This document shows, piece by piece, positions 16,535 to 58,345 of a DNA stretch of 64,000 nucleotides. The stretch spans positions 124,001 through 188,000 of IMG/VR virus record IMGVR_UViG_3300025162_000016; one strand, 5' to 3'. The position numbers and the translations under genes were made by a program. Position 1 is the first letter of the stretch. Each line of letters begins with the position of its first letter. Under the pieces are notes generated by a model. That model saw only the letters and a list, made by a program, of their open reading frames with translations. It was not told the origin of the DNA and searched no databases.

Positions 16535-16540
16535 CACTGA

Positions 16541-16573
16541 TGAACTACCCACCCGCTAAAGCAGGTGGGTTTC
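16541..16573 (+). mobile_element. Orphan IS200/IS605-type terminal hairpin (left-end-like)
   Basis: TGAACTACCCACCCGCTAAAGCAGGTGGGTTTC: GC-rich stem around a CTAAAG core, resembling IS605-group subterminal palindromes; no transposase next to it. Confidence 0.55.
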
Positions 16574-16592
16574 CCCCCCGAGCAATAGTTAT

Positions 16593-18536: not shown

Positions 18537-18574
18537 TGAACCACCCCTACGTCTTTAGCGTAGGGGTGAGTTCA
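18537..18574 (+). mobile_element. Orphan IS200/IS605-type terminal hairpin (right-end-like)
   Basis: TGAACCACCCCTACGTCTTTAGCGTAGGGGTGAGTTCA; its reverse complement begins TGAACT and carries the GCTAAAG core like the 16541 copy. A second weaker hairpin follows at 18593-18624. Confidence 0.55.
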
Positions 18575-18649
18575 TAAGAATATGATCAAATTGCTTCACC
18601 GGTCGAATAATGGGCGGGTGGAGTGCTATATATTAATAGGTAAATTATT

Positions 18650-20755
<2,106 letters not shown>

Positions 20756-20773
20756 CAAATTTTCCTGTACATA

Positions 20774-20902
20774 TTAGTACAAGTACTTAGTACAAGTACT
20801 TAGTACAAGTACTTAGTACAAGTACTTAGTACAAGTACTTAGTACAAGTACTTAGTACAAGTACTTAGTACAAGTACAAGTACTTAGTACAAGTACTTAG
20901 TA
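20774..20902. repeat. Intergenic 13-bp tandem array (TTAGTACAAGTAC)x9 with one 6-bp AAGTAC insertion
   Basis: Eight perfect units 20774-20877, extra AAGTAC 20878-20883, ninth unit 20884-20896, partial TTAGTA; no spacers. Confidence 0.95.
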
Positions 20903-21010
20903 TTTATATAGTAACTGTTTAAAACATAGAACATATATACTGTTTGTACAGTACAGTGTACAGAGAAAAATTAAAAAGTCAACTTATTTTATTTATTATC
21001 GAGTTTTTAT

Positions 21011-25150: not shown

Positions 25151-26695
25151 TCACGGTTGGGTAAAAATCCATTTTGAATGACCGCAATCCCAGATTCTAT
25201 CAAAACCATTATTTTTCATATTTTCCCATTCTGATAAAGAAGCATCGAATAATGGAAGTCTGTTTTTCTGTTTATGTTTTTGAAATTGCATTCGATTCAT
25301 TAAATATTTATAATCTTTAGAGATATAATGATATGATGGCGGTGTATTACTTATAAAATGAAATCCTAGAATAGAATAAAGATTACCATCAAAGTATCTC
25401 CGATCGCTATAAGACACGATAGAAGTAGGATTATAAATTTTTACGAAATGAGAAAATAACTTACTTGCTCCGCCCGATATTATTGTATTTAGTTTGTTAC
25501 AGAACCGTAACATTTCCCATTCGCTGGTTTTATCAAATCTGGAGGATTTGCGAAAGGTCATTAAAGATACTAGTTTTTCATCTGAATATAATCCTAGTTT
25601 TACCGTTGATTTATCCGCTCCTTGTAAATGATTCCCGGTGAGAAACATATCTTTTTCTTTGATTTCCACCGTTTTGATTTCACATTTTCTGGCATGTAAT
25701 TTTCTAAGGTTAATGGGATCGTCTAATTTATTCCTGATAATAGATTTAATAATCTCCGGTTTGTCCCTCCATTCATTCTCAAATATATGAATAAGCGAGA
25801 TTCCATGAGATAAACACCCTTTGGTTTTATTCAAATGATAGCTTTTAATGTGGCCACCCGCATTTTCGGAATGCCAATATAAACCATTAAGTTCAAATGC
25901 GGTATTTTTATCTTTAACTAAAAAATCTAGCTCCTTTCCATATAAAATCGTTCGGTCTCTTCGTTTTATTATTCCAACTGAACAGGCTGTGAGAAAATCA
26001 AAAAATCTGTTTTCTAAAGTAGGTTGCCGAGTTGGATCGCATTTTCCACAAAATAAATTATCGAGATTGTAAACGGTACTGTTGAAGATATATCCACATT
26101 TTTTACAAATAAATTTATAACAAAATGAAAAATGATATCCTTTGTATTCTTCTAAAGAAAACAATGGGGTAAGATTTTCCTTTTCACAAAATTCAAGCAA
26201 ATAAGTATAATGAGCGGTTTTTCTCGCTTGTATTCGAGTTTTCATTATTTTATCCGATTTACATACGTTATCCACCCCATATCTATTTATACAAGTTTTT
26301 TTTGCTTTTTCTCGGTTTGTGTAATTCTCATTTCCATACCGCTCTTTTTTTGTCACTTTTACTTTATTATTATAATCTTTATGCTGCCCATACCATTCTA
26401 CTCCATATTTTTCCATCATCGATTTTTTAAATTTCGTTTTTGTCTCTTCCATCTCCATTGGATGTTTTCCTTCATAATTATTAGCATACGTTGCTAATTG
26501 ACTCTGTCGCATTTTTGCTAATACCGCAGTATCGTGATTGGCACAGGACTTACTACAAAATCTTTGGCGGTTTTTCCGATAGGAGATAGTAAATAGTTTA
26601 TTACAAGTGGGACAGGTCTTATCAATTGTTAATGGATTTATTCTGGGTCTTGACATAATATGCCTTTGGTTCGTATAATGGTAAGTATTATACAA
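25151..26695 (-). CDS. Hef-like free-standing endonuclease paralog (alternative start MSRPRI at 26656)
   Basis: CPTC..FCSKSC, KYGV repeats, ELDFLVKDKNTAFELNGLYWH, NHLQG..LMTF..SYSDRRYF..EWENMKNNGFDRIWDCG; convergent with the NTase gene. Confidence 0.7.
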   Translation of the reverse strand: MYNTYHYTNQRHIMSRPRINPLTIDKTCPTCNKLFTISYRKNRQRFCSKSCANHDTAVLAKMRQSQLATYANNYEGKHPMEMEETKTKFKKSMMEKYGVEWYGQHKDYNNKVKVTKKERYGNENYTNREKAKKTCINRYGVDNVCKSDKIMKTRIQARKTAHYTYLLEFCEKENLTPLFSLEEYKGYHFSFCYKFICKKCGYIFNSTVYNLDNLFCGKCDPTRQPTLENRFFDFLTACSVGIIKRRDRTILYGKELDFLVKDKNTAFELNGLYWHSENAGGHIKSYHLNKTKGCLSHGISLIHIFENEWRDKPEIIKSIIRNKLDDPINLRKLHARKCEIKTVEIKEKDMFLTGNHLQGADKSTVKLGLYSDEKLVSLMTFRKSSRFDKTSEWEMLRFCNKLNTIISGGASKLFSHFVKIYNPTSIVSYSDRRYFDGNLYSILGFHFISNTPPSYHYISKDYKYLMNRMQFQKHKQKNRLPLFDASLSEWENMKNNGFDRIWDCGHSKWIFTQP

Positions 26696-26744
26696 AACAA
26701 TGAGGAAGTCAATATTTTTCCATATTTCGTATATTTATATTTGA

Positions 26745-27091
26745 ATGAGTAAAGTGTCTGAACATATGAAAGCTCTATCCGAAACCAAATATTTAGGAAA
26801 ATCTGTGGATAAGGGTCAGTTAGAATTTTTGGTAAAATGGAATCGATTAGGATTTGAATTTGAACCTAATTATCAGGTTTATACAGAAAAAGATTTGTTC
26901 TATATTGATGGATACGATAAAGAACATAATGTGGTTGTGGAATATGATTCTAAATATCATAACAAAACCCATCAAAAACAAAAAGATTTAATTCGGCAAA
27001 ATAAAATTATAGACATTCTTAGCCGAAAAAATTCTGGCGGTATAACGCCGCAAATAAACAATGTAAGAATGTCTTAGAAAAGGCAGGGTAA
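26745..27091 (+). pseudogene. Small Vsr/DUF559-like endonuclease domain with an apparent single-base frameshift near 27021
   Basis: FYIDGYDKEHNVVVEYDSKYH motif; restoring one base at CTTAGCCG gives ...ILKPKKFWRYNAANKQCKNVLEKAG-stop (TAA 27089-91), ending 4 nt before the tail tube ATG. Confidence 0.55.
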
Positions 27092-27095
27092 CTCT

Positions 27096-27587
27096 ATGGC
27101 AGATTTATTAACTAATAATGAAATATTCTTTACAATGTATGAACCAAAAACACAGAACAGGTTCATCATGTATATTGACGGTATTCCGGCATTTCTTATC
27201 CGAAAAACAGATCGCCCAAAATGGTCTTCTGAAAAAATGACGTTAGATCATATTAACGTTCAACGTTATTACAAAGGAAAGACGAAATGGGAAGAAATTA
27301 CTATTGAAATGTATGATGCTATCGTTCCATCTGCCGCACAATCGGTTTTTGAATGGTTCCGTCTATCGCACGAGTCTGTTACCGGGAGGGACGGATACAT
27401 GGACTTTTATAAAAAAGATGTAATTATTAATGTGGTTGGTCCTGTTGGTGATAAAGTAGAGGAATGGAAACTTGTAGGAGCATTCCCTATTTCATTTGAC
27501 GGCGGTACCCTCGATTGGACCAATGGTGGTGATGCTCTGCTTGCAACCTGCACTTTATCGGTGGATTACGCAATTTTACAATATTGA
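27096..27587 (+). CDS. Tail tube protein (T4 gp19-like)
   Basis: EPKTQNRFIMYI, KTKWEEITIEMYD, FEWFRL, YKKDVII, EEWKLVGAFPISFDGGTLDW, TLSVDYA. Confidence 0.92.
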   Translation: MADLLTNNEIFFTMYEPKTQNRFIMYIDGIPAFLIRKTDRPKWSSEKMTLDHINVQRYYKGKTKWEEITIEMYDAIVPSAAQSVFEWFRLSHESVTGRDGYMDFYKKDVIINVVGPVGDKVEEWKLVGAFPISFDGGTLDWTNGGDALLATCTLSVDYAILQY

Positions 27588-27632
27588 TATATCTATCGTA
27601 TTTTCAGATACTTATAACATCCCTACATCAGC

Positions 27633-27667
27633 AAAAAGATCGGCAAATTTCGCCGGTCTTTTTTTTT
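27633..27667 (+). terminator. Rho-independent terminator after tail tube
   Basis: AAAAAGATCGGC-loop-GCCGGTCTTTTT plus long T run. Confidence 0.8.
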
Positions 27668-27677
27668 CTGAAAATTC

Positions 27678-27706
27678 TTGATACTTTCACGTCAATGGTA
27701 TATAGT
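27678..27706 (+). promoter_or_regulatory. Sigma70-type promoter TTGATA-N17-TATAGT for the endonuclease pair
   Basis: Near-consensus boxes at exact 17-bp spacing upstream of ORF 27712. Confidence 0.65.
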
Positions 27707-27711
27707 TATGT

Positions 27712-28839
27712 TTGAAACCAGAATGTGATATGTTAATTGATTTGGATAAAATAATAAAAGAGAATAAAAGTTGTTATTCTTTTTTCATAAAAAGATATCA
27801 CAGAGAATTATATGATGAAATTTTTAAGTTAGATGGAAGCACTTTTTCGGAGAAGTTGTATTTTTACAAGCATGGAATTAGAGGAGTTTGCAAGGAATGT
27901 AGGAATCAGACACCGTTTATTGGAATAAATGATGGGTATCGAGAATATTGCTCGAATAGATGTGTAAATAAGAATTTAGAAATTAGAGAGCGTATAAAAA
28001 GTGGTTTTATAAAAAAGTATGGAGTTGACAATGTTTCTAAAGATATTTCTATAAAAGAAAAAAAGAAGCAGACGTTTTTTAATAGATATGGAGTTAGCAG
28101 TCCATTTGGGATTAAAGCGGTAAAAGAAAAGCGTATAAGAAATGCAAAAAAATATATTGATTGTCACCGAAGTTCCATTCTGTATCGTTTAAAAGAAGAT
28201 CGGAGAAAAGCATTTATTGATCAGTGTGAGAATGGGGAGCGACTTGGATCTGAAATAGAGGCATTATTTGATATAGATAGTTTTACCAATATAAAAGACA
28301 GAATGTTGAAATTTAGGTGTAAAATATGTAAAAATATTTTCCATCATCATTTACAATGGGGAGTAATACCGATTTGTTGGCGATGTCATCCTAATTCCGG
28401 CTTTCAGGATGAAGTCACGGATTTTTTTCAAAATACGAAATTGATTGTGTTTCCAAATGTTAGAAATGTGATTCGAGGGGAATTAGACGTATACATTCCT
28501 TCGATAAAGTTGGCGGTAGAATGTAATGGTGTATATTGGCATTCGTGTAAAAGAAAGAATCAATATTATCATTTGAATAAAACTATACAATGTGAAGATA
28601 AAAATATAAAATTGATTCATTTGTTTGAAAATGAATGGAATGATGCTACAAAGAATCTATTATCATCGATTTTATCGGATAAATTTAATTTCGATGGAAG
28701 TTTTGAGGTGGATAGAAGGATTTTTAATAAAGTATTTTTTCAGAATAAAAAATATCAATTAGTAGGAGAAAGTATGCCGGAAAAGAAACTATTTGGTGGG
28801 TATGAATGTTGGGATTGTGGAACATTAAGTTTTAAATAA
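27712..28839 (+). CDS. Hef-like endonuclease paralog lacking most of the GNAT-like domain
   Basis: CKEC..YCSNRC, KYGVDNV, ELDVYIPSIKLAVECNGVYWH; C-terminus reduced to GYECWDCG. Confidence 0.65.
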   Translation: MKPECDMLIDLDKIIKENKSCYSFFIKRYHRELYDEIFKLDGSTFSEKLYFYKHGIRGVCKECRNQTPFIGINDGYREYCSNRCVNKNLEIRERIKSGFIKKYGVDNVSKDISIKEKKKQTFFNRYGVSSPFGIKAVKEKRIRNAKKYIDCHRSSILYRLKEDRRKAFIDQCENGERLGSEIEALFDIDSFTNIKDRMLKFRCKICKNIFHHHLQWGVIPICWRCHPNSGFQDEVTDFFQNTKLIVFPNVRNVIRGELDVYIPSIKLAVECNGVYWHSCKRKNQYYHLNKTIQCEDKNIKLIHLFENEWNDATKNLLSSILSDKFNFDGSFEVDRRIFNKVFFQNKKYQLVGESMPEKKLFGGYECWDCGTLSFK

Positions 28840-28841
28840 AT

Positions 28842-30842
28842 ATGAAGACCATTATATTGAATCTTATAAAAAGTAATAAAGATTCATTTGTTCAAATAAT
28901 AAAAGCAAAACATTCGTTATTTTATAATGAAATAAATGAAAAGTTTTCTGGGGGTTCATTTTCAGAAAAAATTTATCAGTGGTTAAATTATGAATCAGGA
29001 GTTAACTGTGGAATTTGTGTGGAATGTAAGTCTTCCACCAAATTCCTTAATATAAAGGATGGGTATAGAAAATATTGTTCTTCTAAATGTGCGAATGTAA
29101 GTACTGCCAGTGTTCGATCTATAAAGATGACTCATGTTGAAAAGGATATTAATATATGGGAACAAAAAAAATGTGAACTATGTAATGAGGATTTTTGGGC
29201 ATATAAAAAGAGGAATGGAAGGTTTTGTTCTAATAAATGTAGTGCTTTGTTTACTGCCAACAATAAAGAACGGCTGGAAAAAATTAAATGTACTAAATTA
29301 AAAGTGTACGGAAATGAGACATATGTTAATCCGGAAAAGGCAAAGCAGACTTGTTTAGAAAAATATGGGGTAGATAATGCTAGTAAGGCTAAAGAAGTAA
29401 TTGTTAAAATTCAACAAGTTAATTTGGAGCGATATGGAAAGAAATGGTCATGGCAATCGGAGTCGGTTAAGGAAAAGATAAAGCAAACAAATCTACTTCG
29501 TTATGGAGTAGAAAATCCTTCTCAATCTTCTCATATTAAAGAGAATAAGATACAATCATATTTAAAACAATATGGAGTTAAAAATCCATTTCAGAATCTG
29601 ACAATTAAAGAAGATATAAAGGCACACTATAAGGAGAAATTTGGAGTTGAATATCCTACTCAGATTGAAGAGGTTCGAAATAAAATAGCAGAAATTGTAA
29701 GAAAAAACAATTATAAATTGCTATGTTCTTCAAAGCGGGTATTAGATAATATAGAAGTATTATTTACGGTTGATGAATATAAAGGATCCTCGTCTGAGTT
29801 TTTATATTCAGTTAAATGTAAAAAATGTGGCAATGTTTTTCAAGATCATTTCGATGGAAATGGACATCCGAGATGTTTAATATGCTATCCTAATATCGCC
29901 GGTTTTTCATATGCCGAAAAAGAAATAGTTTCATATATTCATTCTATTGTTTTGAGAGAAGAGATTATAGAAAAGGATAGAAGTGTTCTTGGTAATAGAG
30001 AATTGGATATTTATATTCCTTCAAAGGCATTGGCTATAGAATATAATGGATTATTCTGGCATTCTGAATCTAATGGTAAAAAATCTAAATTATATCATTT
30101 GGATAAGTTAGAACGATGTCAATCTAAGGGAATTAGATTAATTACAATATTTGAGGATGAATGGGAAAATAACCGGGATATTGTTCAAGTTCGGTTACAA
30201 CATATTCTAAACCTATCCACAAATAAAATATATGCGAGACAGTGTTCGATACAAGTTGTTACATCTAAACTTGCGAATGCTTTTTTAAATAAAAATCATA
30301 TTCAGGGAGGATGCTCTTCATTAGTTAATTTGGGATTGTTTGATGAAAATAGTATATTGGTGGCAATTATGACTTTTGGGAAGCCACGACTTAGTTTGGG
30401 AAGATCGGTGTCTATGCCAGGAGAATATGAATTATTAAGATATGCTACATCAAAAGTGGTTGTTGGAGGAGCATCTAAATTGTTTACACATTTTATTAGA
30501 ATCCACTCCCCTGTAAAAATATTTTCATATTCCGATAAACGTTGGAGCACCGGAAAAATGTATGAAAAACTCGGATTTTTGTTTAAAAAAGAAACTAAAC
30601 CAAATTATTGGTATTTTAAGCCGGGTTATGCTATCCGATATCATCGTTTCGGATTTAGAAAGAATATATTAAATGAAAAATTAGATATATTTGATCCAGA
30701 ATTAACCGAGTGGGAGAATATGCAGTTAAATGGATATGATCGAATCTGGGATTGTGGGAATTCTAAATACGAATGGAATAGTCAACCTTTTTGTGGCAAG
30801 GAATCCCTTCCTTTAGGTAAGGGAGGAATTGCCACGATATAA
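28842..30842 (+). CDS. Hef-like endonuclease paralog (full length, 666 aa)
   Basis: Two Zn-finger blocks, several KYGV(D/E)N repeats, ELDIYIPSKALAIEYNGLFWH, VVGGASKLF..SYSDKRWSTG..EWENMQLNGYDRIWDCG; last ~15 codons overlap an IS-like hairpin. Confidence 0.7.
   Translation: MKTIILNLIKSNKDSFVQIIKAKHSLFYNEINEKFSGGSFSEKIYQWLNYESGVNCGICVECKSSTKFLNIKDGYRKYCSSKCANVSTASVRSIKMTHVEKDINIWEQKKCELCNEDFWAYKKRNGRFCSNKCSALFTANNKERLEKIKCTKLKVYGNETYVNPEKAKQTCLEKYGVDNASKAKEVIVKIQQVNLERYGKKWSWQSESVKEKIKQTNLLRYGVENPSQSSHIKENKIQSYLKQYGVKNPFQNLTIKEDIKAHYKEKFGVEYPTQIEEVRNKIAEIVRKNNYKLLCSSKRVLDNIEVLFTVDEYKGSSSEFLYSVKCKKCGNVFQDHFDGNGHPRCLICYPNIAGFSYAEKEIVSYIHSIVLREEIIEKDRSVLGNRELDIYIPSKALAIEYNGLFWHSESNGKKSKLYHLDKLERCQSKGIRLITIFEDEWENNRDIVQVRLQHILNLSTNKIYARQCSIQVVTSKLANAFLNKNHIQGGCSSLVNLGLFDENSILVAIMTFGKPRLSLGRSVSMPGEYELLRYATSKVVVGGASKLFTHFIRIHSPVKIFSYSDKRWSTGKMYEKLGFLFKKETKPNYWYFKPGYAIRYHRFGFRKNILNEKLDIFDPELTEWENMQLNGYDRIWDCGNSKYEWNSQPFCGKESLPLGKGGIATI
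30801..30833 (+). mobile_element. Orphan IS200/IS605-type right-end-like hairpin overlapping the 3' end of ORF 28842
   Basis: GAATCCCTTCCTTTAGGTAAGGGAGGAATTGCC with CTTTAG core; reverse complement resembles the copy at 31188. Confidence 0.5.
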
Positions 30843-30846
30843 TAAA

Positions 30847-30875
30847 TTGACTTTTTTTGTTTTATACTATATATT
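30847..30875 (+). promoter_or_regulatory. Sigma70-type promoter TTGACT-N17-TATATT with no downstream ORF
   Basis: Exact spacing; the next terminator is ~200 nt downstream and the interval holds only very short reading frames. Confidence 0.6.
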
Positions 30876-30881
30876 TGATAC

Positions 30882-31065
30882 AGTCATAAAAGGCACTCCG
30901 TTTACGGAGACACAGTTATGATGACATTGATTTTTTGTTAGTTTATATAAATTAACGGGGCTGCAATCAATCAGCCTATTGTATGTAAATCTTCTAAGAG
31001 TTTAGAAGTATTATAAACTCCCACCTTCAGGTGGGGTAGTTGATATATAGTTATTATCAGCGGAG
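30882..31065 (+). ncRNA. Candidate orphan TnpB-type omega/reRNA scaffold plus guide
   Basis: Several stems (TCATAA/TTATGA, CTCCG/CGGAG, ATTGATT/AATCAAT, GTTAGTTT/AAATTAAC, CTTCTA/TAGAAG); relic frame NGAAINQPIV resembling TnpB C-terminal tails; IS605-like right end AAACTCCCACCTTCAGGTGGGGTAGTTGAT (31015-31044). Confidence 0.45.
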
Positions 31066-31076
31066 TCTATATACAG

Positions 31077-31110
31077 AGCCCTCGAAAGCGATACTTTCGG
31101 GGGTTTTCTT
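31077..31110 (+). terminator. Rho-independent terminator
   Basis: AGCCCTCGAAAG-loop-CTTTCGGGGGTT followed by TTCTT. Confidence 0.7.
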
Positions 31111-31182
31111 CATATTGGGAGTGCGGTTAAAATATTTTTGTGGTTGACACTTTTTCGGAGATGTTGTTCTATTTATAATAGT

Positions 31183-31227
31183 GGAAGGAATTCCTCCCCG
31201 AGGCTAAAGCCATTGGGATTTCCTTCC
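31183..31227 (+). mobile_element. Orphan IS200/IS605-type hairpin between late promoter and start codon
   Basis: GGAAGGAATTCCTCCCCGAGGCTAAAGCCATTGGGATTTCCTTCC with GCTAAAG core. Confidence 0.5.
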
Positions 31228-31236
31228 TCCAAAATT

Positions 31237-31962
31237 ATGAAAAAAGAATTACTGGAATATATTATTCGGAAGTGTGTAAAAGAAGTATTAGCGAACGTTT
31301 CTGAGGCGGATGATACCGCAGGAGCACCCGCCCCGCCTGCAAGTGGGCAGGGAACCGCAGATACATTAGCAATTCCTCCGGCGTCTCCTCAGGGGGCTCC
31401 GAAACCGGCAAAAGCAATAAAAGGGGTATGGTTTGTTGATCCAAAGAAAGCATTACAGCCTGATTATAAGGGGGTTCCATTGCAAGATCTTAAACCGGGA
31501 GATCAAGGAAACAATGAACGGAGAATTTATAATATTGCAGCTAGAAGTGGTGGTCCCCGAGTTATGCTTACTATTTCTGCTCGTCAAAAGGTTGATGCTG
31601 TTTTAAGTGGAAAAGTGCCATTCGTTTATCTTTATGTAGGAACGAAACCATGGTCACCTTCTCAGCAATCCAGTCCGGAGGCATCTACTGGAACTCCGTC
31701 GGATGATTCTGAAAATGCAACGGTTTCTATACATTGGGCACCCACACTTCAAGCCGCCAAAAGTTTAAGTGTGCCATCTGGAGTATCGGCGGAACATCCT
31801 CAGACGGCGTTCAATGAACCAGAACCAGGGTTAACAACGCCTCAGACTGGTCCTCAGACTGCTTCTAAAACTCAGGCTCCAAGCATCGATGAGAGTAATA
31901 GTTTAAAAAATATGGTTTCATCTATGATTGGGGAAGCTCTTAGAGAAGCCCGAAGAAAATAA
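31237..31962 (+). CDS. Hypothetical putative head/virion protein (start revised to MKKELLEYII)
   Basis: ATG at 31237 follows the TATTTATA box at 31170; N- and C-terminal amphipathic helices (IIRKCVKEVL, MVSSMIGEALRE). Confidence 0.6.
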   Translation: MKKELLEYIIRKCVKEVLANVSEADDTAGAPAPPASGQGTADTLAIPPASPQGAPKPAKAIKGVWFVDPKKALQPDYKGVPLQDLKPGDQGNNERRIYNIAARSGGPRVMLTISARQKVDAVLSGKVPFVYLYVGTKPWSPSQQSSPEASTGTPSDDSENATVSIHWAPTLQAAKSLSVPSGVSAEHPQTAFNEPEPGLTTPQTGPQTASKTQAPSIDESNSLKNMVSSMIGEALREARRK

Positions 31963-32373: not shown

Positions 32374-33195
32374 ATGAATGATCAAATCGTTACCCTTACT
32401 CGACCGGGAGTTCGTCCCGCTGCATCGCAATCGACCAAGCAGGAATCTACATTTCCTACAGAAACAATCAACATCCCATCAAAAGGATGGTTTTATTCTT
32501 CTGACAGTCCTCTTTCGGCGGGTACATTGGAATTAAAGCCAATGACAGCAAGAGAGGAAGATATTCTTACTTCTAAAAATCTTATTCAAAAAGGCATTGT
32601 TCTAGATAAGGTATTGGAGTCGCTTATAGTAGAAAAAGCAATTCATTCTGAAGACATGTTAAATTGTGATAGAAATGCTGCTTTTGTGGCTATTCGTCGT
32701 ATGGCATATGGAGACGAATATAAAGCTAATATCACTTGTCCTAAGTGTGGTGTTGACAATTCTTTAACTATTGATCTCGGAAAAATGGATAACAAGCCAT
32801 TTGATTTTGAAAAATATCCGAAAGGGACAAATGAATTTGAGTTTACGTTGCCGGTATCTAAACGGGTAGTGACGTTTAAATTACTTACCAAAAAAGATGA
32901 AGATGCTATTGATGCTGATTTAAAAGCTCTTACAAAAATCTCTAAAGAAGTTACGAGTGAAATTACTACCCGTCTTAAATCATATATTATTGCATTGGAC
33001 GGGAATGCGGATAAAAGTGCTATTCGGAAGTTTGTGGATGAGATGCGAGCGGGGGATAGTTTAGCATTAAGAAATTATGTTCGCACTATGACACCGGATG
33101 TTGACATGAGTTTTGATTTTGTGTGCAGTTCATGCGGAGTTGAAAGGAGGGAGGACGTTCCATTAAGCGTCTCCTTTTTTTGGCCTAACGGATGA
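32374..33195 (+). CDS. Tail/baseplate assembly chaperone (T4 gp26-like, short product)
   Basis: FPTETINIPSKG, LKPMTAREEDIL, CPKCG, FEFTLPVSKRVVTFKLLT, terminal VSFFWP; directly upstream of the tape measure gene. Confidence 0.8.
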   Translation: MNDQIVTLTRPGVRPAASQSTKQESTFPTETINIPSKGWFYSSDSPLSAGTLELKPMTAREEDILTSKNLIQKGIVLDKVLESLIVEKAIHSEDMLNCDRNAAFVAIRRMAYGDEYKANITCPKCGVDNSLTIDLGKMDNKPFDFEKYPKGTNEFEFTLPVSKRVVTFKLLTKKDEDAIDADLKALTKISKEVTSEITTRLKSYIIALDGNADKSAIRKFVDEMRAGDSLALRNYVRTMTPDVDMSFDFVCSSCGVERREDVPLSVSFFWPNG

Positions 33196-45464: not shown

Positions 45465-45503
45465 TCGGGAGTCTATCTATATGGTAGACTCCCGATTTCA
45501 TTT
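45465..45503 (+). terminator. Stem-loop/terminator after SSB gene
   Basis: TCGGGAGTCTATC-loop-GGTAGACTCCCGA followed by TTTCATTT. Confidence 0.7.
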
Positions 45504-45513
45504 AATTTATATT

Positions 45514-47118
45514 ATGGCAAAAACGAAATCAACTCACGTAGAACAAGATGAAACCGCAAGTCGAGATAAGTTGGCTACTTTTCTTCAAAAGGCTCTTAAT
45601 GGCCGACAAAAGGATGGTCAAAAAGTAGCTTATTTTTTGGATGAGAAAGAAGACCCCTCCAATGTAATTGATTGGGTATCAACTGGATGCACCATGTTAG
45701 ATTTGGCTATTTGTAATAGACCAAATGCCGGTCTTCCTGCCGGGAGAATTTCTGAATTCAATGGGCTCGAATCCTGTGTCACCGAAGATACCGAAATTGC
45801 AGTAAGAATTGGCGATGATGTAAAAATCTTAAATAAGTTTAAAATTGGTGACGTAAAACCCTTGATGGAACAAGGAATCCCTGTGGCGGTTTTAACTGTA
45901 AAAGAGGAATTTGTTAAAATCACAAAATATGTAGAAAAGGGATTACTTGATACATTTGAAGTATTTACTGAATACGGAAATAGTATTAAAGTAAGCCGTG
46001 AACACCGGTTTTTTACTAATGACGGTTGGGTGGAATGTAAAGATTTGATTCCAGGAAGACACTCTATTTTTTATCGTGAAGATGGATATACAAACGCATT
46101 ATCTTTTTGGAAAGTTACAGAAATATTTCCGATAGGAAAACATAACATTGTTGATATTACGGTCGATCATCCCGATCATTGTTATTTTGGTAATGGAATG
46201 TTAAATCATAATTCCGGGAAATCTTTACTATGTGCTCACATTATTGCAGAGACGCAGAAAAAAGGTGGATTTGCAGTTATGCTTGATCCGGAATACGCTG
46301 CGGCTCCTGATTTTTGGACCGCATTGGGCGTTTCTGTGAAAGATCTTCTTTATGTACCTTGTTCCTATTTGGAAGAGATGCTTGGGCATTTGGAAGCTAT
46401 TATCGGAGAGACTAGAAAAGAAAATCCCGATCGATTAGTTACCATTATTACGGATTCAATCGCCTCGGTTCCTACAAAGAAAGAACTTGAAGCTGATTAT
46501 GATGCCGCTGGGTATGGAACCGATAAATCTAAACTGCTTTCTTTAGCAATGAGAAAACTTAATGGACTTATTGCTCGACAACGGATTTGTGCGGTATTCA
46601 CAAATCAACTTCGACAAAATCTTAAAGCAGTATCATTTGGTGACCCCTATCTGGAACCGGGAGGTATGGCATTTCGGTATGCGGCAAGTGTGCGAGTTAG
46701 AACTAAAAATGTTGGTCGAGTATCTACTAAAGAAAAAGAAGTAATTGGTAGAACTATTCAAACTCAAGTGACAAAGACTCGATTCGGCCCGTCTTTCCGA
46801 ACAGCGTCTTTTGATATCCACTATGATAGCGGTATTCAAAATCTCGCAAGTTGGTTGGATTACATGAAAGATCATGGATTGATTACCGGCACAAAAGCGG
46901 GATATACATTTAAAATGTGTGATAATCAAATTCTTAATGCGAATGAATTTGTTCGTGTCGCCAATGAACAGCCCGAATTCAAAGAAAAAGTTTATAAATC
47001 CATTTGTGATAATTATATCATGGTATATCGTCCCGCAAACTCCAAAATAGATGAATCGGTAGAGCATTTAGAAGGAGATGGCAAAGATGAAGAAAAAGTA
47101 AAAGAGACTGTCGAATAA
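45514..47118 (+). CDS. recA: RecA/UvsX recombinase containing a mini-intein (start revised to ATG 45514)
   Basis: STGCTMLDLAI, GLPAGRISEF, P-loop GLES|SGKS split by the intein, DSIAS, FTNQLR, PGGMAFRYAASVR. Confidence 0.9.
   Translation: MAKTKSTHVEQDETASRDKLATFLQKALNGRQKDGQKVAYFLDEKEDPSNVIDWVSTGCTMLDLAICNRPNAGLPAGRISEFNGLESCVTEDTEIAVRIGDDVKILNKFKIGDVKPLMEQGIPVAVLTVKEEFVKITKYVEKGLLDTFEVFTEYGNSIKVSREHRFFTNDGWVECKDLIPGRHSIFYREDGYTNALSFWKVTEIFPIGKHNIVDITVDHPDHCYFGNGMLNHNSGKSLLCAHIIAETQKKGGFAVMLDPEYAAAPDFWTALGVSVKDLLYVPCSYLEEMLGHLEAIIGETRKENPDRLVTIITDSIASVPTKKELEADYDAAGYGTDKSKLLSLAMRKLNGLIARQRICAVFTNQLRQNLKAVSFGDPYLEPGGMAFRYAASVRVRTKNVGRVSTKEKEVIGRTIQTQVTKTRFGPSFRTASFDIHYDSGIQNLASWLDYMKDHGLITGTKAGYTFKMCDNQILNANEFVRVANEQPEFKEKVYKSICDNYIMVYRPANSKIDESVEHLEGDGKDEEKVKETVE
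45775..46212 (+). mobile_element. Mini-intein (146 aa) in the RecA Walker A loop
   Basis: Starts CVTEDT, ends VDITVDHPDHCYFGNGMLNHN, +1 residue Ser; no endonuclease motifs. Confidence 0.9.
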
Positions 47119-56450: not shown

Positions 56451-57047
56451 ATGATTAAATTGTCTAAATGGGCAAAACAATACGGTGTAACATATAAAAC
56501 TGCTTGGAAATGGTTCAAAGAAGGGAATTTTCCTGCCAAAACAAAACAGTTATCAACCGGAACTATATTAGTTTATGATGATGAAAATATCAAAGAGAAG
56601 GAAATTAAAACCGTAATTTATTGTAGAGTTTCAAATCACTCCAGAAAAGCAGAATTGGAATACCAAGTTCAACGATGTGAAGAGTTCTGTGTTAAAAACG
56701 GTTGGCAAATATCAAAAATATATAGAGAGATTGCCTCTGGTATGAATGATAAAAGAAAACAATTGTGGACAATGATTGATAGCAATCCAACCAGAATTGT
56801 TGTAGAGAATAAAGATAGATTGACTCGTTTTGGATTTAATTATATCGAGCAATTATCAAAGAAATTAGGAACAGAAATTATAGTAATTCATATGGATAAA
56901 GAAGATGATAAGGATTTGATAAAAGACTTGGTATCCATAATTTATTCTTTCTGTGCCAGATTGTACGGAATGAGAAAGGCGTATAATAAAACCAAGAAAA
57001 TCAAAGAAATTATAAATATGACCGATCAATTGGAAATTGTAAAATGA
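56451..57047 (+). CDS. tnpA: IS607 transposase (MerR-like HTH + serine recombinase)
   Basis: MIKLSKWAKQYGVTYKTAWKW, YCRVS, EIASG, VVENKDRLTRFGF, DLVSIIYSFCARLYG. Confidence 0.93.
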   Translation: MIKLSKWAKQYGVTYKTAWKWFKEGNFPAKTKQLSTGTILVYDDENIKEKEIKTVIYCRVSNHSRKAELEYQVQRCEEFCVKNGWQISKIYREIASGMNDKRKQLWTMIDSNPTRIVVENKDRLTRFGFNYIEQLSKKLGTEIIVIHMDKEDDKDLIKDLVSIIYSFCARLYGMRKAYNKTKKIKEIINMTDQLEIVK

Positions 57048-58345
57048 TCAAATCAAGTAAACATACAATTAAATTCTCGAACAATATAAAATTGGAGAAT
57101 TTAAACTTTATTCTTAAAGAATACCGAAGATGCTTACAGCATTTTATCGATTATTTGTGGATAACTCCTTACTCGTGGACCGATGACAAAAATATTATTC
57201 ACATGATGGATATTAAGAATAATAAGTATGATGCTCCTCAATTTGTTACGTCCAATATAATTAGTAATTCGGGATTAATTACAAATCTATCAGGAAGATT
57301 GCTCAAGTGTTGTATGACTCAGGCGATGGGAATGATTAAGGCATCGTTAGAAAAACAAAGAAAAAGAATTTATATTTTCAATAAGCATAAATTATCTGGA
57401 AAATCAAAGAAAAGTCTTAAATTATTAATCCGTAAAATTAAACAAAATATTCCACAAAAACCAAATGGTTATATTGCTAATATGGAATTAAATTCTATTT
57501 GTGCGGATTTTATGTTTACCCCGGAATCCAATGATTTTAATGGGTTTCTTCAGTTTAAATGTTTAACAACAAATAAAATCAAGATTAAAATTCCCGTAAA
57601 ATTTGACCGTCATTCTATTGGATTAATGAATAGAGGGAAGATGTTAAATTCATTTCTGGTTAAAAATAATTCAATTGATATTAGATGGGAGATTGATATC
57701 CCTAAATTGAGAGACGAAGGAAATATTATTGGATGTGATCAGGGATTGAAAACGGTGCTGACTTGTAGCAATGGAATTACAACATTATTGACTGATAATC
57801 ACGGACATTCATTAGATTCAATATTGAATACTGTGTTGAAAAAAACCCGTGGATCGAATGCATTTAAAAGAGCAAAGGATCATCAAGAAAATTTTGTTAA
57901 TTGGTCAATAAATCATTTGAATTTGGATAATATAAAGCAAATAAATTTAGAAGAAATCCGGAATATTGGATATAAAAATCGAACAAGTAAGAAACTTTCT
58001 CATTGGCAAAATACATTAATTAGAGACAAGATAGAGTCGGTGTGTGAAGATCGAGGAATTAGGTTAATTTATCAATCTTCAACTTATAGGTCTCAGAGAT
58101 GTAGTTGCTGTGGAAATGTTCGTAAATCGAATCGGAAAGGAAAAATTTATTCATGTAAACATTGTGGAAACACGATGGATGCTGATTTAAATGCAGCAAA
58201 AAACCACGAAATAAGTCTTCCCGAAATCCCGTATGATTTACGAAATCTAAATCTCAATAGAAAAGATGGGTTTATGTGGAGGGAAGATGGATTCTATGAT
58301 TTAGATGGTAGGAGTTTACAGTCCCTACTTCATAAAAAAGAATAA
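57044..58345 (+). CDS. tnpB: TnpB RNA-guided nuclease, RuvC catalytic residues present
   Basis: RuvC-I GCDQG, RuvC-II INLEE, Zn finger CSCC...CKHC, RuvC-III DADLNAAKN; ATGA overlap with tnpA. Confidence 0.9.
   Translation: MIKSSKHTIKFSNNIKLENLNFILKEYRRCLQHFIDYLWITPYSWTDDKNIIHMMDIKNNKYDAPQFVTSNIISNSGLITNLSGRLLKCCMTQAMGMIKASLEKQRKRIYIFNKHKLSGKSKKSLKLLIRKIKQNIPQKPNGYIANMELNSICADFMFTPESNDFNGFLQFKCLTTNKIKIKIPVKFDRHSIGLMNRGKMLNSFLVKNNSIDIRWEIDIPKLRDEGNIIGCDQGLKTVLTCSNGITTLLTDNHGHSLDSILNTVLKKTRGSNAFKRAKDHQENFVNWSINHLNLDNIKQINLEEIRNIGYKNRTSKKLSHWQNTLIRDKIESVCEDRGIRLIYQSSTYRSQRCSCCGNVRKSNRKGKIYSCKHCGNTMDADLNAAKNHEISLPEIPYDLRNLNLNRKDGFMWREDGFYDLDGRSLQSLLHKKE

What the first reader, a model, noticed from the sequence alone, without database searches (positions are those of the whole stretch)
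30847..31110. Candidate stand-alone TnpB-type guide RNA cassette inserted into a phage promoter
Seen: a TTGACT-N17-TATATT promoter, ~165 nt of multi-stem non-coding sequence, an IS605-style right-end hairpin (AAACTCCCACCTTCAGGTGGGGTAGTTGAT, 31015-31044), ~30 nt of unique sequence (ATATAGTTATTATCAGCGGAGTC...) and a terminator, with no protein gene. TATATA is duplicated at 30868-73 and 31044-49; deleting the 176 bp between the copies restores TTGACT-N17-TATAGTTAT, the same -10 context as the promoter at 27678. A relic frame NGAAINQPIV resembles the C-terminal tails of IS605-group TnpBs (recognition from memory, not a search). Established: TnpB reRNA/omegaRNA is the 3' end of tnpB plus the right end, and the guide is the flanking DNA. 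Inference: a protein-free mini-element transcribed from the promoter it invaded, making a guide against the empty allele of this locus in related phages and relying on a TnpB supplied in trans. That would be an RNA-only homing or exclusion element.
Basis: partly seen in the sequence, partly recalled or inferred. Interest (0 to 1): 0.8.

Follow-up and report, generated by a model that had tools for sequence, protein, structure and literature searches.

The report
Stand-alone TnpB guide RNA mini-element
A 259-base, protein-free remnant of a TnpB "jumping gene" in a giant phage still carries its own promoter and the folded guide-RNA scaffold, so it probably borrows the TnpB nuclease encoded elsewhere in the same phage; such stand-alone guide RNAs are known in bacteria, and this is a phage variant with an unusual front end.

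Summary
Window 30786-31044 is a protein-less derivative of a 1.27-kb tnpB-only IS200/IS605-type element ("TnpB-A"). It keeps that element's left end, its promoter position and the last ~90 nt (tnpB 3' end plus right end). That ~90 nt is a covarying omega-RNA core with a pseudoknot. Homology in every copy stops exactly at 31044, the predicted scaffold/guide junction. The relic frame matches the TnpB-A C-terminus. An intact 378-aa TnpB-A lies elsewhere in the same phage genome.

The insertion model is wrong. The promoter belongs to the element, the left boundary is at about 30786 next to a TCAA motif, and the TATATA pair is coincidental. The terminator is ancestral locus sequence.

In place of tnpB the element carries a ~75-nt 5' module with a conserved hairpin. 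Other stand-alone copies in several phages share this module, but tnpB-linked omega-RNAs lack it.

No matching empty allele or protospacer was found. Near-identical phages carry either this allele or an imprecise deletion scar. Stand-alone omega-RNAs acting in trans are already described, so this is a new variant of a known kind. Transcription and TnpB loading are untested.

The parts
30782..30785 (+). TCAA, the putative transposon-adjacent motif (TAM) flanking the left end
   Evidence: All five independent left junctions read (T/G)TCAA followed by CCTTTTTGTGG: window, L170, L185, L274, L275. The occupied/empty pair L275/L342 places the left-end start right after this motif.
30786..30838 (+). 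Left end (LE-A) with a subterminal hairpin at about 30796-30835. It overlaps the last ~19 codons of the HEG ORF.
   Evidence: nhmmer with the L201 tnpB left end matches window 30779-30849, E = 1e-13. The reverse search finds only TnpB-A elements and L170.
30847..30875 (+). The element's own sigma-70-like promoter (TTGACT, 17-nt spacer, TATATT). Inferred transcription start near 30882.
   Evidence: The hexamers are conserved in L170 while the spacer is only 10/17 identical. The position matches the tnpB promoter of L201/L274. SA2 and SA3 copies also have TTGACA-N17-TATAnn.
30883..30956 (+). Stand-alone-specific 5' module. Hairpin H1 spans 30883-30922 and holds the conserved motif AAGGCACTCCG-N4-CGGAG (30890-30909). 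An AT-rich hairpin follows at 30937-30956.
   Evidence: Folds. The motif is shared by SA1, SA2, L167, L164 and L182 and is absent from tnpB-bearing elements.
30955..31044 (+). Omega-RNA core, equal to the relic tnpB-A 3' end plus the right end. P1 is 30959-63 paired with 30972-76. The pseudoknot pairs 30966-71 with 31039-44. P2 is 30991-97 paired with 31002-08. P3, the right-end hairpin, is 31019-36.
   Evidence: Covariance model R1 scores 86.2 bits. Covariation: 91.8% of cells paired, 17 of 28 pairs changed on both sides, 0 of 500 shuffles as good. About 91% identical to the TnpB-A right end.
30951..31016 (+). Relic reading frame I-N-G-A-A-I-N-Q-P-I-V-C-K-S-S-K-S-L-E-V-L, bounded by stops
   Evidence: Homologous to the TnpB-A C-terminus, which ends ...AAINQPIVCKSSKSLGVLQTSAFRQG*.
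31045..31064 (+). Predicted guide (first ~16-20 nt of flank, ATATAGTTATTATCAGCGGA)
   Evidence: Homology among all family members ends at 31044 and the flanks all differ. No second copy or protospacer was found.
31075..31107 (+). Intrinsic terminator that probably ends the primary transcript. It is ancestral to the locus, not part of the element.
   Evidence: Homologous terminators follow the tail-tube gene in the HEG-free relatives L205, L206 and L207.
28842..30842 (+). Hef-like homing endonuclease gene whose 3' end reads through into LE-A (neighbour, not part of the element)
   Evidence: PHROG 3339, E = 1.4e-130. In the alternative allele L343 the protein is 651 aa and ends ...EWNSQPFF*.

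Best explanation
Window 30786-31044 is a 259-bp non-autonomous, protein-less derivative of the phage's own tnpB-only IS200/IS605-type element (TnpB-A). This is the kind called a stand-alone omega-RNA or PATE-like element.

Shown:
- It keeps the left-end hairpin, a promoter at the tnpB promoter position, and the terminal ~90 nt that form the conserved, pseudoknotted omega-RNA core.
- tnpB is replaced by a ~75-nt non-coding 5' module.

Inferred:
- Host RNA polymerase starts near 30882 and reads through the right end into the flank, stopping at the resident terminator 31075-31107.
- The ~163-nt scaffold plus about 16-20 nt of flank is bound by the 378-aa TnpB-A made elsewhere in the same genome.
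- The complex cuts DNA that carries TCAA followed by the flank sequence without the element. That means excised or element-free copies among replicating or co-infecting genomes.
- Recombination with an occupied genome then restores or spreads the element.
For: Homology of ends and core:
- Left end to TnpB-A, E = 1e-13. Core to the tnpB-A 3' end, E = 4e-16.
- The family has 20+ members. In each the homology stops at GTTGAY and the flanks differ.
- The upstream ORFs of the linked copies are TnpB: PF07282 at 8.7e-25 plus PF01385, with PDB Cas12f/TnpB hits. The RuvC D/E/D motifs and the zinc finger are visible in the sequences.

RNA structure:
- Covariation supports P1, P2, P3 and a pseudoknot next to the guide. 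ISDra2 omega-RNA has the same logic (PMC10097598).

The parent element is mobile:
- TnpB-A copies are 99.8% identical in unrelated contexts.
- One occupied/empty pair lies in flanks that are 99% identical.

Partner and signs of selection:
- The partner TnpB-A is on the same 368,758-bp contig.
- Window against L170 (different locus, about 90% identical): the promoter hexamers are kept while the spacer diverges, and the stem changes are compensatory.
- The 5' module is conserved across divergent stand-alone lineages.

Literature: stand-alone omega-RNAs work in trans (PMC10691335), and PATEs encoding omega-RNAs have been noted (10.1101/2023.03.14.532601).
Against: - There are no expression or binding data.
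- The tnpB-internal 5' part of the native omega-RNA is missing and replaced, so compatibility with TnpB-A is unproven.
- No precise empty allele (TCAA plus guide) and no protospacer was found in any collection or relative examined.
- The alternative allele in 99.8%-identical phages is an imprecise 333-bp loss with a 69-bp palindromic scar, so the element is dispensable.
- No Y1 TnpA was seen in the window or near the TnpB-A loci.
- The hairpin conservation could serve DNA-level transposition rather than the RNA.
Confidence: 0.55

Rival explanations
1. An inert fossil: an internally deleted TnpB-A element that is neither transcribed usefully nor mobile, drifting toward loss.
For: - The tnpB reading frame is destroyed.
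- The element is lost imprecisely in about half of the near-identical phage contigs read.
- No target was found for its guide.
Against: - The replacement 5' module is not tnpB-derived and is conserved in other stand-alone lineages with different ends.
- Promoter hexamers and RNA stems are maintained between the window and L170 while the promoter spacer diverges.
- Several phages carry multiple stand-alone copies at different loci.
Confidence: 0.2
2. A purely DNA-level non-autonomous transposon (MITE/PATE). Its hairpins are conserved only for recognition by a transposase supplied in trans, and any RNA is a by-product.
For: - The left-end and right-end hairpins resemble each other and those of the autonomous-type elements.
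- SA2 copies are about 97% identical with unrelated flanks on both sides.
Against: - No Y1 transposase was found.
- Conservation covers the promoter hexamers, P1, P2 and the pseudoknot, which a transposase does not need.
- The pseudoknot covaries G-C to A-U, 11 to 4.
Confidence: 0.12
3. A regulatory or otherwise TnpB-independent small RNA that reuses an omega-RNA-like 3' domain, with the conserved 5' hairpin as its functional part.
For: - The 5' hairpin AAGGCACUCCG-N4-CGGAG is invariant across GC-poor and GC-rich phages.
- There is no Rfam match.
Against: - The 3' core tracks the cognate TnpB subtype: SA1 is about 91% identical to the TnpB-A right end.
- The variable 3' flank behaves like a guide.
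Confidence: 0.08
4. One reading: a 176-bp element (30874-31049) inserted into a resident phage promoter, with a TATATA target duplication.
For: The hexamer repeat exists and the arithmetic of the restored promoter is correct.
Against: - Homology with L170 and with the tnpB elements runs from 30782/30786 through the promoter.
- IS200/IS605-type insertion makes no duplication. The occupied/empty pair shows none.
- The repeat is at chance level.
Confidence: 0.02
5. A structured 3' UTR or terminator region belonging to the upstream homing-endonuclease gene.
For: It lies directly downstream of the HEG, and the HEG ORF ends inside it.
Against: - The same element occurs in L170 with no HEG upstream.
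- Other Hef-like HEGs lack it.
- It has its own promoter.
Confidence: 0.02

Closest known systems
Stand-alone omega-RNAs and PATE-like IS200/IS605 derivatives. They are described in bacteria, and stand-alone omega-RNAs are reported to work in trans with compatible effectors (PMC10691335 citing Altae-Tran 2021; Meers et al. 10.1101/2023.03.14.532601).
   Same: - No protein gene.
- Left and right ends of a TnpB element present in the same genome.
- An omega-RNA scaffold next to a variable flank.
- Presumed use of TnpB in trans.
   Different: - It sits in a T4-like jumbo phage.
- It has its own strong promoter.
- The tnpB-internal half of the scaffold is replaced by a conserved non-coding 5' module shared by several stand-alone lineages.
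- It lies inside a homing-endonuclease island.
ISDra2 TnpB omega-RNA/reRNA (PMC8612924, PMC10097598)
   Same: - The RNA overlaps the tnpB 3' end and the right end.
- The guide is the flanking DNA.
- A pseudoknot joins the last scaffold nucleotides to a 5' region.
- A 4-5-nt motif flanks the left end.
   Different: - No detectable sequence similarity, and no Rfam model.
- The motif here is inferred as TCAA (TTGAT in ISDra2).
- The protein partner is closer to Cas12f entries than to ISDra2 TnpB (1e-25 against 2e-8).
Free-standing homing endonucleases of T4-type phages, and collaborative or trans homing (PMC2988022, PMC2790892, review PMC13565253)
   Same: A selfish element at a gene junction in a phage structural module. 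It is expected to spread by double-strand break and recombination during co-infection. The review lists transposon non-restorative homing between co-infecting phages as a category.
   Different: Recognition would be RNA-guided, and the nuclease is encoded at another locus.
Virus-borne CRISPR mini-arrays or solitary repeat-spacer units (from my own knowledge, not checked here)
   Same: A guide-only locus on a virus that relies on an effector encoded elsewhere.
   Different: The guide here is fixed by the insertion site rather than acquired, and there are no repeats.

Membership tests
Stand-alone omega-RNA / PATE-like IS200/IS605 derivative | Left and right ends homologous to those of a TnpB-encoding element | tested here: met
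   Left end E = 1e-13 and right end/core E = 4e-16 against TnpB-A. CM score 86 bits.
Stand-alone omega-RNA / PATE-like IS200/IS605 derivative | No effector or transposase gene inside the element | tested here: met
   No ORF of 60 aa or more. The tnpB frame is reduced to 21 codons between stops.
Stand-alone omega-RNA / PATE-like IS200/IS605 derivative | A compatible effector in the same genome | tested here: met
   The 378-aa TnpB-A is on the same 368,758-bp contig and in the same sample. Compatibility itself was not tested.
Stand-alone omega-RNA / PATE-like IS200/IS605 derivative | The RNA is expressed and guides the effector in trans | not testable with these tools
   Needs RNA-seq, RIP or a cleavage assay.
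TnpB omega-RNA (reRNA) | Conserved structured scaffold with a pseudoknot abutting the guide | tested here: met
   17 of 28 pairs covary. The pseudoknot helix is 90% paired with a G-C/A-U switch.
TnpB omega-RNA (reRNA) | The scaffold overlaps the 3' end of an intact tnpB | tested here: not met
   Only a 21-codon relic remains. The upstream scaffold half is replaced by a non-homologous module.
TnpB omega-RNA (reRNA) | Match to a curated omega-RNA or IS605-orfB covariance model | tested here: not met
   Nothing reaches gathering score, and E-value mode gives only noise. The tnpB-linked relatives also match nothing, so this says the family is uncurated.
IS200/IS605-family element | Insertion 3' of a short motif with no target duplication, and scarless absence in the empty allele | tested here: met
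   Shown for the parent TnpB-A element: L275 occupied against L342 empty, with flanks 99.2-99.5% identical. For the window copy itself no precise empty allele was found.
IS200/IS605-family element | A Y1 (HUH) TnpA transposase available | tested here: inconclusive
   None in the window ORFs scanned or within 6 kb of the TnpB-A loci. Only serine recombinases were found. The rest of the 369-kb genome was not scanned.

The most novel reading that the evidence does not exclude
Stand-alone omega-RNAs with the conserved AAGGCACUCCG-N4-CGGAG 5' domain form a distinct, phage-borne class of dedicated guide-RNA genes. Each large phage would carry one or two TnpB/Cas12f-like nucleases and several dispersed promoter-driven guides placed at junctions of conserved structural genes. 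It would use them in trans to cut and convert, or exclude, co-infecting relatives. That would be a natural multi-guide, array-free stage between a transposon omega-RNA and CRISPR.
Probability: 0.2. Interest if true: 0.75.

Novelty: new variant of a known kind. Interest (0 to 1): 0.55.

Why it matters
If the RNA is made and loaded, a lytic jumbo phage is using one TnpB with extra guide genes encoded in trans. The ecological role of stand-alone omega-RNAs has been described as unknown (PMC10691335). This phage system would make that question testable, because it has natural presence/absence alleles and a TAM-variant empty site. It also gives a compact natural scaffold (about 163 nt) in which the protein-coding half of an omega-RNA has been swapped for a small conserved hairpin module. 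That is relevant to how guide RNAs became separate from tnpB on the way to Cas12. If it is inert, it is still a clean example of IS decay inside a homing-endonuclease island.

Tried and rejected
- Rfam at gathering score on the window and on seven related loci gave nothing. E-value mode gave only a terminator look-alike (His_leader, 29 bits) and HEARO at 15 bits on the wrong strand.
- No tRNA or tmRNA.
- BLAST against GenBank phages matched only the HEG gene.
- There is no second copy in the window or in 80 syntenic relatives.
- The genome contigs pattern scan gave 61 hits. That is about the ~69 chance matches I estimate for 17 fixed bases, and none passes the covariance model. The host stays unknown.
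- The guide 21-mer occurs only in the phage itself. Guides of all family members have no trans targets in the loci held.
- The empty-site pattern for the L274 context found nothing.
- HEG 3' UTR idea: rejected, because L170 has no HEG.
- TCAAC as the TAM was revised to TCAA after the occupied/empty pair.
- The in-window TnpB (57044-58345) as partner: rejected. It is only 32% identical over 72 aa to TnpB-A, and there is no core match near it.

Full report
**Observation.**
- The hexamers TTGACT (30847-52) and TATATT (30870-75) are 17 nt apart.
- TATATA occurs at 30868-73 and at 31044-49.
- The GC hairpin followed by GGTAGTTGAT ends at 31044.
- A 14-bp-stem terminator lies at 31075-31107.
- No ORF of 60 aa or more lies inside.
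- The + strand of 30876-31115 folds far better than shuffles (z = -5.9).
- Promoter-like hexamer pairs are near chance here (42 against 34.3 +/- 6.2). The 11-mer shared with 27699 is not significant.

**Setting.** The window is part of a T4-like jumbo phage. The same sequence lies on a 368,758-bp contig.
- The finding sits between the tail-tube gene (27096-27587, gp19-like) and a baseplate-hub gene (32374-33195).
- Three Hef-like homing-endonuclease genes surround the tail-tube gene: 25151-26695 on the minus strand, 27712-28839, and 28842-30842.
- Relatives have the tail-tube gene followed directly by a terminator, a late-promoter-like motif and the next gene (L205, L206, L207). Others have different endonuclease genes at this junction (L003, L204).
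- The sequence to the right of 31044, including the terminator, is colinear with what follows the tail-tube stop codon in those relatives. The terminator is therefore ancestral locus DNA.

**What it is.** nhmmer with 30876-31074 found a weak homologue in another phage. Two conserved blocks from that hit were used as patterns and brought in a family.
- In all members the homology ends right after GTTGAT or GTTGAC, which is window 31044. The following bases all differ.
- One class overlaps the 3' end of 378-397-aa ORFs. These are TnpB: PF07282 plus PF01385, with best PDB matches to Cas12f and TnpB. The RuvC D/E/D motifs are visible, and type A also has the CxxC...CxxC zinc finger.
- Two subtypes occur: type A with right end ...GGGGTAGTTGAT, and type B with ...GTTGAC. 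Both are present in the window's own phage (L193 and L190, on the 368,758-bp contig).

**Left boundary.** The window sequence from 30782 through the hairpin at 30796-30835 and the promoter is homologous to the left end of TnpB-A elements and of the stand-alone copy L170.
- The TnpB-A element is 1.27 kb and 99.8% identical in two unrelated contexts.
- One of those insertions (L275) has an empty counterpart in the window's own phage (L342), inside flanks that are 99.2-99.5% identical.
  - The occupied allele reads ...GCC-TTCAA, then the element, then GAGTCGC...
  - The empty allele reads ...GCC-TTGAA-GAGTCGC...
  - This is the canonical IS200/IS605 geometry. The element follows a short motif, makes no duplication and is scarless when absent.
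- With all five left junctions reading (T/G)TCAA, I infer a TCAA TAM and place the window element at 30786-31044 (259 bp).
- The empty allele differs from the occupied one by one base inside that motif. This could be chance or escape. I could not tell which.
- The promoter therefore belongs to the element. It sits where the tnpB promoter sits in L201/L274.
- The HEG ORF reads about 19 codons into the left end. In the alternative allele L343 it ends earlier (651 aa).

**RNA.** I built a covariance model of the core and re-aligned 24 matches. On that alignment the proposed structure has these properties:
- 91.8% of cells form standard pairs, against 33-48% when partners are slid.
- 17 of 28 pairs change on both sides.
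- No shuffle out of 500 reaches the observed values.
- The structure has P1, P2 with a 3-bp extension, the right-end hairpin P3, and a pseudoknot.
- The pseudoknot pairs the P1 loop (RTCAAT) with the last six scaffold bases (GTTGAY). It switches G-C to A-U between subtypes, 11 to 4.

A pseudoknot that pairs bases just upstream of the guide (positions -5 to -3) with a 5' region is the hallmark of the ISDra2 omega-RNA (PMC10097598). Neither these RNAs nor their tnpB-linked relatives match any Rfam family.

**The stand-alone class.** The window copy and L170 (SA1, about 90% identical, at different loci) lack tnpB.
- Between promoter and core they carry a ~75-nt module. Its first hairpin holds AAGGCACTCCG-N4-CGGAG (30890-30909).
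- The same motif, a TTGACA-N17-TATAnn promoter and a hairpin-plus-GTAGTTGAC end occur in a second type (SA2: L110, L162, L189, L195). SA2 copies are about 97% identical to each other, with unrelated flanks on both sides.
- They also occur in longer RNAs of GC-richer phages (L167, and similarly L164 and L182).
- The motif is absent from all tnpB-bearing elements examined.
- Single contigs carry a tnpB copy plus several stand-alone copies.
- Between the window and L170, the promoter hexamers are kept while the spacer is 10/17 identical. The RNA is about 93% identical by my own count from the alignment. Most core differences are compensatory or wobble changes.
- This pattern fits selection on a transcribed, folded RNA better than decay.
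- The SA1 core is about 91% identical to the TnpB-A right end. It is far less similar to SA2, which suggests it tracks its cognate nuclease.

**Partner.**
- The exact 378-aa TnpB-A protein is recorded on the 368,758-bp contig. It is also on a 96,641-bp contig from the window's sample.
- The window contains a serine-recombinase gene directly upstream of, and overlapping, a TnpB-like gene, an arrangement like IS607 (56451-57047 and 57044-58345).
- That in-window TnpB is only distantly related to TnpB-A (32% over 72 aa). No core match lies near it.

**Alleles and targets.**
- The guide sequence occurs only in this phage.
- Phages 99.8% identical in the flanks are dimorphic at this site. Counting the places shown plus the similar places not shown, about 11 contigs have the window allele and about 9 have the L343 allele.
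- The L343 allele lacks 30791-31123, which covers the element, the guide and the ancestral terminator. It has instead a 69-bp palindrome.
- One arm of that palindrome resembles the P2 region of the core (local score 32 against 19.8 +/- 2.9 for shuffles, 1 of 500).
- This looks like an imprecise loss scar rather than a virgin site, and it holds no protospacer.
- The predicted target, TCAA followed by the 31045-31064 sequence, has therefore not been observed.

**Mechanism, and how sure I am.**
- Shown: the derivation from TnpB-A, the boundaries, the conserved structure, the absence of a protein gene, the presence of the nuclease in the same genome, and the mobility and insertion geometry of the parent element.
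- Inferred: transcription from 30847-75, loading into TnpB-A, cleavage of TCAA-plus-guide DNA, and recombinational retention or homing.
- I put the full chain at about 0.55. The identity of the element alone I put above 0.9.
- The rivals are an inert fossil, a purely DNA-level MITE, and a TnpB-independent small RNA. Each is listed with the result that would refute it.

**Comparison with what is known.**
- Stand-alone omega-RNAs that lack an effector and transposase, lie in genomes with effector loci, and work in trans are already described. Their biological role is stated to be unknown (PMC10691335).
- PATE-like IS605 derivatives encoding omega-RNAs have been noted (Meers et al.).
- Transposon homing between co-infecting phages is listed as a category in a 2026 review (PMC13565253).
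- What differs here is the phage setting, the dedicated promoter, the conserved replacement 5' module, and the natural allele series.
- Hence: a new variant of a known kind, of moderate interest.

Noticed in passing
window 31176-31241, minus strand: A solo left end of the type B TnpB element (nhmmer E = 2e-11). It sits between the late-promoter-like motif and the start codon of gene 31237, abutting TTCAT (the reverse complement of ATGAA). Relatives L205 and L207 have TTCAT there without the insert, which suggests TTCAT is the type B adjacent motif. The hairpin now forms the gene's 5' UTR.
   Followed up: partly
window 56451-58345: A serine recombinase (PF00239, 198 aa) overlaps a 433-aa TnpB-like protein (PF07282). 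This is an IS607-type element inside the window. The protein is only distantly related to TnpB-A, and no R1 core match lies near it.
   Followed up: partly
window 25151-30842; L003, L204: The junction between the tail-tube gene and the next gene is a homing-endonuclease hotspot. The window has three Hef-like genes, one of them a 375-aa truncated copy. L003 has an HNH gene, L204 has a different ORF, and L205, L206 and L207 have none.
   Followed up: partly
window 27583-27670 and 31040-31110: The 9-mer TTGATATAT occurs both at the tail-tube stop codon and at the right-end/flank junction. Two diverged copies of the 'post-tail-tube intergenic region plus terminator' flank the 3.46-kb block. How the block was assembled is unexplained.
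   Followed up: partly
L343 9697-9765 (replaces window 30791-31123): A 69-bp palindrome with perfectly matching arms in near-identical phages. One arm resembles the P2 region of the omega-RNA core. It may be a fold-back repair scar after loss of the element.
   Followed up: partly
L342 2044-2048 against L275 5874-5878: The window's own phage is the empty allele for a relative's TnpB-A insertion. It carries the full protospacer but has TTGAA instead of TTCAA at the adjacent motif. This could be TAM escape or a chance SNP.
   Followed up: partly
L275 10956-12270 against L342 6626-6634: A second tnpB element (391 aa) is present in L275 and absent from the window's phage at an otherwise homologous site. 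These phage populations are polymorphic for several TnpB insertions.
   Followed up: no
window 16540-16575 (minus strand) and 18540-18580 (plus strand): Solo GC hairpins with CTTTAG/CTAAAG loops followed by GTTCAT. They resemble the left-end and right-end hairpins. The first gives a weak R1 hit (14 bits, E = 0.27).
   Followed up: no
window 20761-20922: About 11 tandem copies of a 13-nt unit (TTAGTACAAGTAC) in the intergenic region upstream of gene 21011.
   Followed up: no
window, many intergenic regions (for example 26725, 31170, 33520, 36140, 42968, 58378, 59205): A recurrent (A/C)TATTTATA(A/G) motif just upstream of structural genes. It is likely the late promoter of this phage and is also present in relatives (L205, L207).
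   Followed up: no
window 45481-47118: A RecA/UvsX-like protein (PF00154) with a weak intein-splicing-domain hit. It may contain an intein.
   Followed up: no
L167 3020-3268; L164; L182: Longer promoter-driven RNAs in GC-richer phages. They share the 5' hairpin motif and end in a hairpin plus GTAGTTGAC-like tail, with no tnpB nearby. The stand-alone class is wider than the T4-like phages.
   Followed up: partly
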